Notes under the pieces: generated by a model
What the model was told of the DNA's origin: nothing
Seen by the model: the letters and a program-made list of their open reading frames with translations, nothing else
The model's database searches: none
Made by a program: the position numbers and the translations under genes
Part shown: in pieces, positions 31,955 through 54,892 of the stretch
How the letters are laid out: the number at the start of each line of letters is the position of its first letter
How positions within the stretch are numbered: the first letter of the stretch is position 1
Sequence record: AP017925.1
Strand: one strand, 5' to 3'
DNA length: 64,000 nt

Positions 31955-32125
31955 TTAAACACCACCGCAGTCCGGACAGCAATCATAACCTACTGCACCA
32001 GGTCCATACATTTCTTCGTACGGGATCAAGGGCTTGGTTGAACCACAATACCCACACCGGTATTGGTAGACGGTATCCGTTTCTTTTTCCAAAGATGTTT
32101 CTTTTGTTTCGTGGTTCGTGCACAT
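31955..32125 (-). CDS. small zinc-ribbon protein (56 aa, absent from the ORF track)
   Basis: Manual translation MCTNHETKETSLEKETDTVYQYRCGYCGSTKPLIPYEEMYGPGAVGYDCCPDCGGV; CxxC...CPxC; AGGAAGG SD. Confidence 0.6.
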   Translation of the reverse strand: MCTNHETKETSLEKETDTVYQYRCGYCGSTKPLIPYEEMYGPGAVGYDCCPDCGGV

Positions 32126-32254
32126 GCTGGTTCCCTTCCTATTTAGAATTAGAATTTAAACCATATCCGTTTATGGTTCACACTGAGTATATGTGGTTGA
32201 AATAAATTTCATTTAACCGGCATAAAGGGAGGGCCGAAGCCCTCCCCTCGTTAC

Positions 32255-32821
32255 TTAGTACGGAAAATCAGCCTTCTTGATCTTCACCATGCGACCATCA
32301 GCGTGATGCCACACGATGCCCTCAATCGGCTTATCACTCAGGTAGTCCATCAGTTCATTAAAGCTGCGCGGGCAATCCACCAGCACGTCTTCTCCGTGAG
32401 GCACTAGCACGTGTTCAGTGAGTTGCTCCGGATTGGCTCCATGACGAGTACCAATCTTCGGACCACACACTTCATACGTCCCGTCAGGCACGCCTTGCGG
32501 ATACCTAGAGACCGCTTTGTCGATCGCTTCACGGATATAAACGGAGTCAGGACCAGTAGCAGGCACCCAACCCGGCCAGTGTCCACTGATAGGGTCCGGA
32601 TTAGGCTGAGCAGGAACAAAGTCTAGAGGCGGAGTACGCCCAGTCTTTGCATCGTAACGCTTAAACACATTACCTGCCTTAACCATAACAGCTACGCCAT
32701 CCCACTTACGAGTAGCACAGCCTTCCCCTTCCTGTACCCATTCTGCACCAGCACAGACTTCGTCACGAACTTTACGGTTACCTTCGTAGTTACGCTGAAA
32801 CAGCGAAATGATTTTCTTCAC
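32255..32821 (-). CDS. ATP-dependent RNA ligase-like nucleotidyltransferase (DUF5565 / RLIG1-C12orf29-like), GTG start
   Basis: Motif I RKWDG, GHWPGWVP, TYEVCGPK, LVPHG, motif IV EGIVWHH and motif V MVKIKK; GAAGGA SD before GTG 32821. Confidence 0.8.
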   Translation of the reverse strand: MKKIISLFQRNYEGNRKVRDEVCAGAEWVQEGEGCATRKWDGVAVMVKAGNVFKRYDAKTGRTPPLDFVPAQPNPDPISGHWPGWVPATGPDSVYIREAIDKAVSRYPQGVPDGTYEVCGPKIGTRHGANPEQLTEHVLVPHGEDVLVDCPRSFNELMDYLSDKPIEGIVWHHADGRMVKIKKADFPY

Positions 32822-32898
32822 GATACTTCCTTCGGTAGGTTTCGATAATTTTTCGAATCCCATCTCCACCACCGAAGTTACTTCTACTGCTACTGCCA

Positions 32899-32924
32899 GC
32901 ATAAGCGAGAGGTTTCCCTCCCGC
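32899..32924 (-). terminator. hairpin between tRNA-like RNA and ligase gene
   Basis: GCGGGAGGGAAACCTCTCGC followed by TTATGC on the minus strand. Confidence 0.6.
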
Positions 32925-32951
32925 CTACGGTTAGGTTGTTTGGTCATTGCT

Positions 32952-33130
32952 TTCTGAGGGAGGATTCGAACCTCCAATTTTGGTCTGAGACCGGACCCAA
33001 CGACAGGCCGACTGTGTTGCTGCGTCCGAGAACGCAACCCTTGCTAGAATTCACAGCCCTGCAGATTTCCTCTTCCAGCCCTAAGGCGTTCAAGTACAGT
33101 CCACGTGTATACCAATTCCACCACTCATCA
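32952..33130 (-). ncRNA. tRNA-like RNA with 102-nt insertion replacing the anticodon loop
   Basis: D-arm GTGGAATTGGTATACAC, anticodon stem TGGAC/GTCCG, 16-nt variable region, T-arm GGAGG-TTCGAAT-CCTCC, partial acceptor stem TGAG/CTCA, no CCA. Confidence 0.65.
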
Positions 33131-33187
33131 ACCTAACGGAGAGACCTACGGTTTCTCCCTATCAAATTAACCAACCCTGTAAAAAAG

Positions 33188-33487
33188 TTACATACTGGTC
33201 AAGATCTTCTCCGACAGCACCACGACCGGAGAATACATCTTGAGTGTCTTCTCATGGTCATTCCCTTCTTCGAGCTTCAGCTCGCTCAAGGTGTACTCGT
33301 TCTCGACCATGACCTCGACGTGGTCTTGCAACAGGTCTTTGATCATGGAGAGAATAGCAGTCTTGCCACTACCGATCTTTCCTTCGATCGTGATCTTTAC
33401 AATCGGCTTAGCATTGCCAGCCAACAGCACGTCATCAGCAAGACTGATGACAGGAGTCTGACGAACTGCGGGTTCTTGATTCTGCAT
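33188..33487 (-). CDS. small P-loop protein (kinase-like, short)
   Basis: ITIEGKIGSGKT Walker A as in nucleoside/nucleotide kinases; only 99 aa; AGGAG SD. Confidence 0.6.
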   Translation of the reverse strand: MQNQEPAVRQTPVISLADDVLLAGNAKPIVKITIEGKIGSGKTAILSMIKDLLQDHVEVMVENEYTLSELKLEEGNDHEKTLKMYSPVVVLSEKILTSM

Positions 33488-33676
33488 GGTGTTCTCCTTT
33501 ACGGTGTGGTGAATACTAATAACTTAGTCTCGTAGTAAAAATTGCATGTCTCGTAAGTTATTGATTATAATAGAGATAGTGGGTCGACTCCTTAACGATG
33601 GCTTGGTTTCTGTGAAAATTACAGAACACTTTAATCTCATGCGAGTGCGTAATATCGCTCGTGGGGTTGGTGCGAA

Positions 33677-34015
33677 ATGCACGCCAGAGGCGTGGGCTTT
33701 ATTAAGCTTATATACAAGAGGGGTCATCCTTCTTATAGACACTGGCAGGAGTCAGTGCTCCTTAGCTATTCACTACTGACGGAGGAAGACATGGGCTGTG
33801 CAGAGATCATGGAGTCGACTACGCTAGAAGAGGAGGAGTGTCTCGCTATCCTCTATCCGTGGCAGTGTTGGTCGAAGGGAATGACTCAGTATGAAGAGTT
33901 TCGTTCTCTGGAAGAGATGGCGAAAGCCAAGGCTCTGAGTGTGGACGTGATCATGGATGCCATTGCAAGCAACAAGGGCAATCTGGATGACCTGCACTTC
34001 GTGAAGCGTGCTTAA
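33677..34015 (+). CDS. hypothetical protein, possible C-terminal NUMOD1-like HTH
   Basis: EEFRSLEEMAKAKALSVDVIMDAI resembles NUMOD1-type helices; start uncertain. Confidence 0.35.
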   Translation: MHARGVGFIKLIYKRGHPSYRHWQESVLLSYSLLTEEDMGCAEIMESTTLEEEECLAILYPWQCWSKGMTQYEEFRSLEEMAKAKALSVDVIMDAIASNKGNLDDLHFVKRA

Positions 34016-53993: not shown

Positions 53994-54061
53994 GATGGCT
54001 CTTCGGGTTATCGTTGATATCTATTCATGGAATGAACGGACGTGGTAAAAAAGCGCTGTGG

Positions 54062-54892
54062 TTACCAGCGCCTCAGATAGAGTCTGAGCTGTTCAGCAAG
54101 GAACTTATCCTTGATCTGGTTCAGCCCATAGTTGACCTTGTCCTGGCTCGTAGCAAAACTCCAGTTGTACTTCGTGCCAAGATCGACCAACGTCTTGCGG
54201 TAAGTCGCGCCAATCGGACGGAAAAGCTGACTATCGCCGAAGATGGACAGGAAACCCTCATGGAAAGGAATCATTGGCAGATCCTTGCCGTTGTAGAACT
54301 TCGTGTACCATCGACTCTTGTCCTTAATGTTACCCGTGTGGGATTCCAGTAGGGACAAGTTGCTGAACGCCTTGGTAGTCAAATCGTACGGATAGTGCGT
54401 CAACATCAAGGTGTTCGCAGACTGCGAATCAGTGATTTGCAGGGGATAAAGTTTGATCAGCTCCTTTTCGTTCTTGATGATCTGACCCAAGACCATCTGC
54501 AAGCTTTTGGCGAACAGTATCTGGTTAGGAGTGCTGTCAACGCGCAAAATCGCGTGAGGAAGACGCGATTCCAGACCGATATAGTCCGGACAATACAGAA
54601 CGGTCTTGAACTGATGTTGGCCTTGCTCGGCAGAAATCTCCAGATACGAATCCAGCTCATGCCGGAACGAATCGATCAGATCTTTCTGGTCGATCGCTGG
54701 AATGTTTTCCTTACCGATGGCTTCGTAATAGTTACGAAAGAGAGTTTTCACATTCACCCAGTGGCCGGAGAAGTCCTTCAACAACTTCGGACCAGCTGGG
54801 TGATCGGGATGGATACCGAGTGCGCCCTCTAAAGCCAACGACGTGGCAATAGACAGCGGAAAGTATCCAGTAGCGCGTTCGGATGCATTCAT
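54062..54892 (-). CDS. conserved protein, PIN/flap-endonuclease-like fold possible
   Basis: SIATSLALE and WVNVKTLFRN motifs; coupled to the SbcD-like gene. Confidence 0.5.
   Translation of the reverse strand: MNASERATGYFPLSIATSLALEGALGIHPDHPAGPKLLKDFSGHWVNVKTLFRNYYEAIGKENIPAIDQKDLIDSFRHELDSYLEISAEQGQHQFKTVLYCPDYIGLESRLPHAILRVDSTPNQILFAKSLQMVLGQIIKNEKELIKLYPLQITDSQSANTLMLTHYPYDLTTKAFSNLSLLESHTGNIKDKSRWYTKFYNGKDLPMIPFHEGFLSIFGDSQLFRPIGATYRKTLVDLGTKYNWSFATSQDKVNYGLNQIKDKFLAEQLRLYLRRW

What the first reader, a model, noticed from the sequence alone, without database searches (positions are those of the whole stretch)
32930..33137. Unannotated tRNA-like RNA whose anticodon loop is replaced by a 102-nt folded domain
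Seen directly on the minus strand: T8-G9 and a Leu-type D-arm (GTGG-AATTGGTATA-CAC), anticodon stem TGGAC (33103-33099) pairing with GTCCG (32996-32992), a 16-nt variable region with a GGTC/GACC hairpin, and a canonical T-arm GGAGG-TTCGAAT-CCTCC (32975-32959). The 102 nt between the anticodon strands (33098-32997) fold on their own (CAGG/CCTG, GCTGTG/CACAGT, GTTGCGTT/GACGCAGC). The acceptor stem has only 4 contiguous pairs and no CCA, and a 9-bp outer stem (GTTAGGTTG/CAACCTAAC) closes the element. The D/T elbow is intact while decoding and charging features are lost. Inference: a tRNA-mimic ncRNA (decoy for anticodon nucleases or another elbow-binding protein) or a tRNA with an unknown small intron. 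It does not match tmRNA ends, and the insert is shorter than typical group I introns.
Basis: partly seen in the sequence, partly recalled or inferred. Interest (0 to 1): 0.85.

Follow-up and report, generated by a model that had tools for sequence, protein, structure and literature searches.

The report
Braced tRNA-Leu-like phage small RNA
The flagged 208 bases encode a real, conserved, unannotated phage RNA that keeps the corner of a leucine tRNA but cannot decode or be charged; its job is unknown, and my best guess is that it binds a protein that normally recognises tRNA.

Summary
The window is Ralstonia jumbo phage RP12. The element at 32930-33137 (minus strand) is real and its limits are right.

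**What is there.** I found 18 distinct homologues in Ralstonia and Xanthomonas jumbo phages, a Paraburkholderia contig, a lambdoid temperate phage and metagenomic phages. They support, by compensatory changes:
- the outer stem
- a 3-bp remnant of the acceptor stem
- the Leu-type D arm
- the T arm
- the short variable hairpin

A model built without the RP12 clade finds this site alone in the 64 kb (103.5 bits, E 8e-23). Ordinary phage tRNA-Leu genes score 47.5 bits or less.

- The proposed anticodon stem TGGAC/GTCCG is not conserved (53% paired, 51% in shuffles).
- The D arm is instead followed by two hairpins: an anticodon-arm analogue with a variable loop, and a 7-bp helix.

**What it is not.** It is not an intron-containing tRNA, a tmRNA, a YrlA-type Y RNA or a coding region. 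Nothing in Rfam 15 matches.

**Context.** In 14 of 18 loci it lies on the same strand as tRNA genes within about 1.2 kb. In 7 of those a tRNA is within 30 nt. In RP12 it stands alone next to an RNA ligase gene.

**Function.** Untested. A non-decoding tRNA mimic or decoy is my best guess.

The parts
33129..33137 (-). P1, 5' strand of the outer closing stem (GTTAGGTTG)
   Evidence: Pairs with 32930-32938. All 8 tested pairs show changes on both sides across 18 homologues; other versions are TTATAGAAG/CTTCTATAA and AGAAGAGA/TTTCTTCT.
33124..33127 (-). Pa, 5' strand of the acceptor remnant (T-GAG); only GAG is conserved as paired
   Evidence: GAG/CTC is kept in all 18, with compensatory AAG/CTT in L022 and GAA/TTC in L014. 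The fourth pair forms in only 7 of 18.
33105..33123 (-). U8, G9 and the Leu-type D arm (GTG-G-AATTGGTAT-A-CAC), with A14, A15, G18 and G19 invariant
   Evidence: Alignment invariants. D stem 96% paired, with one pair switching GC/UA. The motif AGTGGKGGAANNGGTATAC otherwise hits more than 100 ordinary phage tRNA-Leu genes.
33061..33104 (-). hp1, the anticodon-arm analogue: basal helix GTGGA/TCTGC around a variable extension, with no conserved anticodon loop
   Evidence: In most homologues (about 14 of 18) a hairpin starts 0-1 nt after the D stem; loops run from 3 nt upward. L008 has GGGGA/TCTCC. For RP12 itself the helix is inferred from FLC4-3B and L006, because RP12's own MFE differs.
33010..33058 (-). 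Px, a 7-bp helix GGCTGTG/CACAGTC carrying an inserted hairpin GTTGCGT/ACGCAGC (33038-33019)
   Evidence: It ends 5 nt before strand b in 12 of 18. It covaries by eye: GTCAGTG/CACTGGC, GTATGCG/CGCATGC, GTAGGTG/CACCTGC, GTGAGAT/ATCTTGC. Minimal versions have a loop RATTAA.
32998..33009 (-). Conserved linker GGCCT, then strand b of the pseudoknot (GTCGTTG, 33004-32998)
   Evidence: b pairs with 32943-32949. 6 of 7 pairs show changes on both sides and 97.6% of cells are paired. Variants: GACAGTG/CACTGTC, GTCTGTG/CACAGAC, CGACGTG/CACGTCG, TCCAGTT/AACTGGA.
32982..32992 (-). V, the short variable-arm hairpin GGTC-TCA-GACC
   Evidence: Covaries by eye (GGGC/GCCC, TGAC/GTCA, GGCC/GGCC). Roughly 35 nt long in the L026/L098/L128/L037/L107 group, and absent or unfolded in L027, L013 and L014.
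32959..32975 (-). T arm GGAGG-TTCGAAT-CCTCC
   Evidence: 100% paired, and 4 of 5 pairs show changes on both sides. T54, U55, C56 and A58 are invariant.
32939..32958 (-). 3' tail: CTCA (Pa 3' strand), conserved GAAAG linker, CAATGAC (strand b'), then CAAA
   Evidence: CTCAGARAG and CRWA are conserved in nearly all homologues. b' covaries with b.
32930..32938 (-). P1, 3' strand (CAACCTAAC)
   Evidence: See the P1 5' strand.
32905..32924 (-). GC-rich hairpin GCGGGAGG-GAAA-CCTCTCGC followed by TTATG; the probable 3' end of the transcription unit
   Evidence: A hairpin at the same place in FLC4-3B and L006 is followed by TTTGTG or GTGCAC. It is not called by the simple terminator scan, so this is an inference.
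33179..33186 (-). TTTTTTAC motif directly after the stop codon of the upstream gene, 42 nt before P1
   Evidence: The same motif precedes the element, or the noncoding block that holds it, in FLC4-3B, L006, L011, L118 and (as TTTTTAC) L014. It occurs 5 times in the window against 0.88 expected. Whether it is a promoter or a terminator tail is unresolved.

Best explanation
The element is the gene for a small stable RNA of about 130-220 nt. It belongs to a previously undescribed phage family that derives from a class II tRNA-Leu.

**What it keeps from a tRNA**
- U8-A14, A15-U48, G18G19 with U55/C56, and T54-A58.
- The D arm, the T arm and usually the variable arm. Together these should form the outer corner and core of the tRNA L-shape.

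**What it has lost or replaced**
- The acceptor stem is cut to 3 bp and sealed by an outer stem, so there is no free CCA end and it cannot be charged.
- The anticodon arm is a hairpin of arbitrary loop, so it cannot decode.

**What it has gained**
- An extra helix (Px).
- A 7-bp pseudoknot between the strand just 5' of the variable arm and the 3' tail. I read this as a brace across the inner corner of the L-shape.

**How it is probably made and used**
- In most phages it is transcribed inside tRNA arrays and is presumably cut out by the enzymes that process the neighbouring tRNAs.
- In RP12 it appears to be its own unit between a T6AC motif and a GC hairpin.
- I think it most likely works as a molecular mimic. 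It would present a tRNA-Leu-shaped elbow and core to a host or phage protein that recognises tRNA shape, and bind or titrate that protein without entering translation. Candidates are a tRNA-targeting defence nuclease, a processing or modification enzyme, or LeuRS.

**Shown:** existence, family membership, secondary structure, non-coding nature, tRNA-array context.
**Inferred:** transcription, processing, the L-shape and brace geometry, and the mimic or decoy action.
For: **Family and structure**
- 18 distinct homologues.
- Covariation in P1, Pb, T, Pa and D.
- hp1 and Px recur in per-sequence folds.

**Membership without bias**
- Model R2, built without the RP12 clade, gives 103.5 bits and E 8e-23, and it is the only hit in the window.

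**Distinct from real tRNA-Leu**
- Members score 103-142 bits; ordinary phage tRNA-Leu genes score 47.5 or less.

**Derived from tRNA-Leu**
- The D-arm motif is shared with more than 100 phage tRNA-Leu genes.
- The tertiary-contact positions are invariant.

**Not coding**
- No frame is open across the homologues.

**Context**
- Same strand as tRNAs within about 1.2 kb in 14 of 18 loci, and within 30 nt in 7.
- Kept as a stand-alone gene in RP12, which has a single tRNA elsewhere (PMC5468394), and in a lambdoid phage downstream of ninG and one further ORF, ahead of a hairpin followed by a T run.

**Plausibility of a decoy**
- Defence systems that cut class II tRNA variable loops, and phage tRNAs that counter them, are documented (PMC13096335).
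Against: - No expression, processing or binding data exist for any member.
- The fold is not thermodynamically favoured: z = +0.47, and MFE -64.4 against -49 kcal/mol for the model.
- No conserved protein partner was found next to the element.
- The strongly conserved non-tRNA parts (GCCT, GARAG, the Px loop, the pseudoknot) suggest a more specific activity than passive mimicry.
- The variable arm, the target of Septu-type nucleases, is missing in L027 and is short and unfolded in L013 and L014.
- The brace geometry is my inference from connectivity, not a model.
Confidence: 0.45

Rival explanations
1. It is a cis-acting module of polycistronic or leader transcripts. A tRNA-shaped structure would recruit RNase P or other tRNA-processing enzymes, block exonucleases, or help the polymerase read through. 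That would set the ends, stability or continuation of the surrounding tRNA array or downstream mRNA, and the RNA would not act in trans.
For: - It sits with tRNA-like spacing inside arrays.
- In L008, L011 and L118 it is one block of a conserved noncoding region of about 650 nt that leads into tRNA-Tyr.
- In the RP12 clade it lies between the upstream gene and the ligase gene and its leader.
- In L036 it occupies the leader between ninG plus one ORF and a terminator-like hairpin ahead of downstream genes.
- In L036 the outer stem lies within a longer stem whose flanks are shared with Pseudomonas phages Aurca01 and Jeremy, where it encloses other inserts.
Against: - The conserved core, about 125 nt including a pseudoknot, is far more elaborate than a processing signal needs to be.
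- Flanking genes differ completely between members.
- Stand-alone copies are followed by a GC-rich hairpin: a clear terminator in L036, a weak one in the RP12 clade. That fits a discrete small-RNA gene.
Confidence: 0.2
2. It is tied to RNA repair. In the RP12 clade the RNA would be a substrate, cofactor or regulator of the adjacent small RLIG1-like RNA ligase. For example, the ligase could bind both this RNA and the tRNA-like loop in its own mRNA leader.
For: - The order P-loop ORF, element, leader hairpin, ligase is kept in RP12, FLC4-3B and L006.
- The ligase matches PHROG 14301 over its full length and Pfam RLIG1.
- The ligase leader hairpin carries a conserved loop GGTGGNGGNGRTGGGATTCGAAA, with D-loop-like and T-loop-like motifs, and covers the ribosome-binding site.
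Against: - 15 of the 18 family members have no ligase beside them.
- Burkholderia phage FLC9 has the ligase and the leader hairpin, but no element was found in the 8.5-kb fragment examined.
- The link is therefore confined to one clade.
Confidence: 0.1
3. It is a tRNA-Leu gene that is either interrupted by a small intron and spliced to a working tRNA, or simply decaying as a pseudogene.
For: - Leu-type D arm, T arm and variable arm.
Against: - Those calls disagree on amino acid and intron: Ser, Gly, Thr, Thr and Val.
- No conserved anticodon loop.
- The short acceptor remnant (3 conserved pairs), the sealed ends and the pseudoknot are conserved by compensatory change, which is the opposite of decay.
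- No Rfam tRNA or intron hit.
- Canonical tRNA-Leu genes lie on the same fragments.
Confidence: 0.03

Closest known systems
Canonical class II tRNA-Leu of phages and bacteria (Rfam RF00005)
   Same: - D arm with a 3-bp stem and 11-nt loop.
- U8, A14, A15, G18, G19, U48, and the T arm with loop TTCGAAT.
- A variable-arm hairpin.
- A place inside tRNA arrays.
   Different: - Acceptor stem of 3 bp, sealed by an outer stem, with no discriminator or CCA.
- No anticodon loop.
- An extra helix and a conserved pseudoknot.
- Not called by ARAGORN or by the Rfam tRNA model.
Bacterial Y RNAs with a tRNA-like domain (YrlA; Deinococcus radiodurans Yrn1), PMC4201824
   Same: - A non-coding tRNA mimic with D-like and T-like arms.
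- The 5' and 3' ends are closed in a stem and there is no free CCA.
- YrlA-type RNAs also occur in phages.
- The D-then-T order matches Yrn1.
   Different: - YrlA has the permuted order T, acceptor-like loop, D, and it carries an Rsr-binding helix next to an rsr (TROVE) gene.
- Here the order is that of a tRNA.
- I saw no Ro-binding motif by eye, and no TROVE gene among the neighbours tested.
- The pseudoknot and Px have no counterpart in Y RNAs.
Phage T4 stable RNAs species 1 and 2 (rnaC, rnaD)
   Same: Small stable RNAs of unknown function encoded in a phage tRNA cluster. rnaC ends in a T arm.
   Different: No homology: model R1 finds nothing at rnaC or rnaD. The architecture is different.
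tmRNA tRNA-like domain, and the pseudoknotted tRNA-like structures of plant RNA viruses
   Same: tRNA mimicry that uses a T arm, with pseudoknots as building parts.
   Different: Those have a free, chargeable CCA end. tmRNA also has a tag reading frame. ARAGORN's tmRNA search and Rfam both find nothing here.

Membership tests
Canonical tRNA / tRNA-Leu | 7-bp acceptor stem with a discriminator base and a free or addable CCA end | tested here: not met
   Only GAG/CTC (3 bp) is conserved, and the fourth pair forms in 7 of 18. The ends are sealed by P1. CCA is not conserved: ACCA in RP12, ACCG in L008, ATCG in L013.
Canonical tRNA / tRNA-Leu | 5-bp anticodon stem with a 7-nt loop carrying a Leu anticodon | tested here: not met
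hp1 has loops from 3 nt upward with no conserved sequence.
Canonical tRNA / tRNA-Leu | D arm, T arm and the nucleotides that make the elbow and core contacts | tested here: met
   A14, A15, G18, G19, T54, U55, C56 and A58 are invariant, and U8 nearly so. The stems covary.
Canonical tRNA / tRNA-Leu | Recognition by tRNA gene finders | tested here: not met
   ARAGORN finds none in 18 of 18. The Rfam tRNA model gives no hit in RP12 even at E up to 10, and 16.2 bits in L011 against a threshold of 29.
Intron-containing tRNA (group I or protein-spliced) | Exons that rebuild one consistent full cloverleaf, and an intron with a group I core or a bulge-helix-bulge motif | tested here: not met
No Rfam group I hit. 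In the smallest member the insert is 38 nt (L027).
tmRNA | Chargeable acceptor end, tag reading frame, pseudoknot series | tested here: not met
   ARAGORN's tmRNA search finds 0 of 18. No Rfam hit.
YrlA-type Y RNA | Permuted order T arm, acceptor-like loop, D arm, joined to an Rsr-binding helix | tested here: not met
   The order here is D, anticodon-arm analogue, V, T, as in a tRNA, compared with the description in PMC4201824.
YrlA-type Y RNA | Encoded next to a Ro60/Rsr (TROVE) gene | tested here: inconclusive
   No TROVE domain in the neighbours scanned. Whole genomes were not scanned.
The family defined here (models R1 and R2) | P1, GAG/CTC, Leu-type D arm, hp1, Px, GCCT-b, V, T arm, and CTCAGARAG-b' with the b/b' pseudoknot | tested here: met
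   R2, built without the RP12 clade, matches over its full length at 103.5 bits, E 8e-23. All helices are present in RP12.

The most novel reading that the evidence does not exclude
A new class of 'braced' tRNA mimic. Phages would have turned a tRNA-Leu into a closed, pseudoknot-locked L-shape that takes no part in translation. It would neutralise or sense a host factor that reads tRNA shape, for instance as an RNA anti-defence decoy against immune nucleases that attack class II tRNAs, or as an inhibitor of a host tRNA enzyme. It is carried both inside tRNA arrays and as a stand-alone gene.
Probability: 0.3. Interest if true: 0.85.

Novelty: new variant of a known kind. Interest (0 to 1): 0.7.

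Why it matters
**Annotation.** Phage tRNA arrays are normally annotated as tRNAs plus gaps. This shows that one recurring 'gap' is a conserved structured RNA. No feature is annotated under the match in the GenBank records I queried (RP12, RP31, FLC1-1B, FLC4-3B, LucasX, RTH11). It is absent from Rfam 15.

**Biology.** It is a clean natural example of a tRNA scaffold rebuilt for a job outside translation. The elbow and core are kept, both functional ends are removed, and a pseudoknot is added.

**If it is a decoy or inhibitor.** It would add an RNA-only player to the contest over tRNAs between phages and bacterial defence systems.

**Practical use.** It gives a compact RNA of about 130 nt, in its smallest form, for structural work. 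The two covariance models allow it to be annotated in other phage genomes.

Tried and rejected
- **Rfam 15.** Gathering thresholds on the window and on five loci, and E up to 10 on the region: nothing but trivial T-loop matches.
- **ARAGORN.** Plain, with introns, and tmRNA mode: no coherent call.
- **Thermodynamic support.** None, z = +0.47.
Not conserved.
- **Coding.** No frame is open across homologues.
- **Target-site duplication.** AACCGTAGG flanks the element on both sides but is not enriched: 9 matches against 7.5 expected.
- **T4 rnaC/rnaD.** Not homologous.
- **RP12 ligase against T4 57B.** No similarity.
- **Conserved protein partner.** The 99-aa proteins upstream in RP12 and in the Xanthomonas phages are unrelated. 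Pfam on neighbours shows nothing shared.
- **Collection scans.** Several pattern hits were chance matches in coding DNA or other tRNAs: L007, L009, L010, L012, L016, L017, L019-L021, L023.
- **Pseudomonas phages Aurca01 and Jeremy.** They share only the flanks of the L036 copy and are not members.
- **RNAalifold on the ligase leader.** Uninformative, because MAFFT misaligned the 3' arm.
- **Literature.** Searches for a prior description found none. The survey of 10,006 viral candidate RNAs does not single out such a motif in its text, and I did not check its supplementary list.

Full report
**Source and setting.** The window is Ralstonia jumbo phage RP12 (NC_041911, 279,845 bp). Window 32000-34000, minus strand, equals record 248205-250205 at 100% identity.

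The element lies in the 285-nt gap between ORF260 and ORF259.
- ORF260 is a 99-aa P-loop protein in PHROG 33234, of unknown function.
- ORF259 is annotated 'RNA ligase'. It matches Pfam RLIG1 and matches PHROG 14301 over its full length.

No RNA is annotated there in RP12, RP31, FLC1-1B, FLC4-3B, LucasX or RTH11. The original RP12 paper reports a single tRNA (Asn), found with tRNAscan-SE (PMC5468394). A later comparison draws the tRNA-bearing region at nt 123,647-133,418 of RP12, far from this site (PMC11530567).

**Checking the observation.**
- the 9-bp outer stem
- TGAG/CTCA
- T8-G9
- the D arm
- the GGTC/GACC hairpin
- the T arm
- the absence of CCA
- the inner stems

Standard detectors see nothing. 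ARAGORN finds no tRNA or tmRNA here, and Rfam 15 finds nothing even at E up to 10. The fold is not more stable than shuffled sequence (z = +0.47). Any case for a real RNA therefore has to be comparative.

**Homologues.** Pattern scans and BLAST recovered 18 distinct full-length relatives and one truncated copy:
- Ralstonia phages FLC4-3B and FLC1-1B
- a 283-kb IMG/VR contig (L006)
- Xanthomonas jumbo phages LucasX and RTH11
- a Paraburkholderia sp. BCC1886 contig, identical to a 172-kb viral contig (L011 = L004)
- a lambdoid temperate phage (L036 = L062)
- eleven metagenomic phage contigs

Their lengths run from 127 nt (L027) to 222 nt (L006).

**Structure from covariation.** On the 18-sequence alignment I counted pairs for the helices that lie in reliably aligned columns.

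| Helix | Pairs with changes on both sides | Cells paired |
|---|---|---|
| P1 (outer stem) | 8 of 8 | 86.8% |
| Pb (pseudoknot) | 6 of 7 | 97.6% |
| T stem | 4 of 5 | 100% |
| D stem | 1 of 3 | 96% |
| Pa (acceptor remnant) | 2 of 4 | 84.7% |

- Overall 92.8% of cells pair. Shuffles give 67.2% (0 of 500 reach the observed value) and slid partners give 41-49%.
- In Pa, GAG/CTC is kept in all 18, with compensatory AAG/CTT and GAA/TTC. The fourth pair forms in only 7 of 18.
- Pb joins GTCGTTG (33004-32998) to CAATGAC (32949-32943). It crosses Pa, so it is a true pseudoknot. Its variants leave little doubt: GACAGTG/CACTGTC, GTCTGTG/CACAGAC, CGACGTG/CACGTCG, TCCAGTT/AACTGGA.

**The segment between the D arm and strand b.** This part aligns poorly, so I folded it separately in each homologue.
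- About 14 of 18 give two adjacent hairpins.
- The first, hp1, starts 0-1 nt after the D stem. That is where a tRNA's anticodon stem starts.
  - Its basal helix is GTGGA/TCTGC in the RP12 clade and GGGGA/TCTCC in L008.
  - Its loop ranges from 3 nt upward with no conserved sequence.
- The second, Px, is a 7-bp helix that ends 5 nt before strand b in 12 of 18.
  - It covaries by eye.
  - Its loop is either a short RATTAA or an inserted hairpin, as in RP12.

**Is RP12 really a member?** A covariance model built from the 15 homologues outside the RP12 clade finds exactly one hit in the 64 kb. It lies at 32931-33137 on the minus strand, full length, at 103.5 bits and E 8e-23.

With the 18-sequence model, full-length members score 103-142 bits and the truncated L028 copy 69.6. 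The more than 100 ordinary phage tRNA-Leu genes that share the D-arm motif score 47.5 or less. The family is therefore derived from tRNA-Leu but is clearly separate from it.

**What it is not.**
- **Coding.** No frame is open across the homologues.
- **Intron-bearing tRNA.** Canonical tRNA-Leu genes also lie on the same fragments.
- **tmRNA.** No hit.
- **YrlA-type Y RNA.** Those have the permuted order T, acceptor-like loop, D, and sit beside an Rsr gene (PMC4201824). This RNA has the tRNA order, and no TROVE gene was seen among the neighbours tested.
- **T4 rnaC or rnaD homologue.** No hit. Those RNAs are still the nearest analogue by context.

**Context.**
- In 14 of 18 loci, tRNA genes lie on the same strand within about 1.2 kb. 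In 7 loci a tRNA is within 30 nt, which is tRNA-to-tRNA spacing. In L027 the order is tRNA-Leu, element, tRNA-Thr.
- In the RP12 clade the element stands alone. It follows a T6AC motif that recurs upstream of other members and precedes a GC-rich GNRA hairpin.
- In the lambdoid phage the order is ninG, a 225-aa ORF, the element, a hairpin followed by a T run, then downstream genes.
- No protein gene is consistently adjacent.

**How it most likely works.**
- *Shown.* This is a conserved, non-coding, tRNA-Leu-derived fold. The positions that make the tRNA elbow and core contacts are invariant. Both working ends are removed. A helix and a pseudoknot have been added.
- *Inferred from connectivity.*
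  - T stem, Pa and P1 can stack into one long arm.
  - The 3' strand leaves this arm after CTC, runs through GARAG, and pairs with the strand that enters the variable arm.
  - That would tie the two limbs of the L-shape together on the inside.
  - The outer corner, and the variable arm where one is present, would stay exposed, while the faces used by synthetases, EF-Tu and the ribosome would be blocked.
- *Reading.* I therefore favour a trans-acting mimic that binds a shape-reading tRNA factor (confidence about 0.45).
  - Defence nucleases that cut class II tRNA variable loops are documented, as are phage tRNAs that counter them (PMC13096335).
  - That precedent makes the idea plausible but does not demonstrate it.
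- *Rivals.* A cis-acting processing, stability or read-through module (0.2). A clade-specific link to the neighbouring RNA ligase (0.1). An intron-bearing or decaying tRNA (0.03).

**Limits.**
- There are no expression data.
- hp1, Px and V were judged from per-sequence folds and by eye, not from a structural alignment.
- E-values from the short calibration are rough.
- The metagenome and genome scans were single exact-pattern scans, so the family size is a lower bound.
- I could not check whether the motif is listed among the 10,006 unnamed candidates of PMC10690425.

Noticed in passing
window 32819-32902 (minus strand); hairpin 32830-32877: The RP12 ligase CDS probably starts at GTG 32821, not at the annotated ATG 32902. 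PHROG 14301 matches residues 1-188 from that start, and FLC4-3B and FLC9 start at the equivalent codon. The 27 extra codons cover a conserved leader hairpin whose 3' arm overlaps the ribosome-binding site. Its loop, GGTGGNGGNGRTGGGATTCGAAA, is conserved in RP12, FLC4-3B, L006 and Burkholderia phage FLC9. It looks like a translational operator with D-loop-like and T-loop-like motifs.
   Followed up: partly
window 54044-54138 (+): ARAGORN calls a tRNA-Ser (aga) here, but the Rfam tRNA model does not reach threshold. The site also overlaps a minus-strand GC hairpin followed by TTTTTTAC. This is probably a false tRNA call.
   Followed up: partly
window 26581, 27058, 33179, 54045, 62795: TTTTTTAC occurs 5 times against 0.88 expected. 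At least two copies follow GC hairpins like terminator tails, and others sit just upstream of noncoding RNA regions in several phages. It could be a terminator tail, a phage promoter, or both.
   Followed up: partly
L008 4528-5158; L011 5841-6512; L118 2171-2849: In three phages the element is one block of a conserved noncoding region of about 650 nt that runs from a T-rich ACTG motif (TTTTTTAC in L011 and L118) to a tRNA-Tyr gene. Further conserved blocks include ACGAGGGACCTCAGACCCAAACCT, GAGTCAA-CCTCTTAAT and GTCACGAGG. It may be a larger composite RNA.
   Followed up: no
L024 3077-3500; L025 3077-3250: Xanthomonas phages LucasX and RTH11 share further conserved noncoding sequence just downstream of the element (AATGAAGTGTC, AGCTNAGGGTGCAGGCT). 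In RTH11 it ends in a strong terminator.
   Followed up: no
L036 1860-2060; L147 1500-1650; L148 1500-1640: In Pseudomonas-type temperate phages a long stem (GCAGATG...GCTGATG / ATCAGC...CATCTGC) is conserved, but it encloses different inserts: the tRNA-like core in L036, and unrelated sequences in phages Aurca01 and Jeremy.
   Followed up: no
L148 about 1395-1480; L116 9286-9434; L055 4403-4535; L065 4617-4760: Other phage tRNA-like genes have an enlarged or replaced anticodon region. ARAGORN does not call them, and three (L116, L055, L065) score only 33-44 bits with model R1; the L148 copy (phage Jeremy) got no hit at E up to 0.01. Non-canonical tRNA derivatives may be common in phage tRNA regions.
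   Followed up: no
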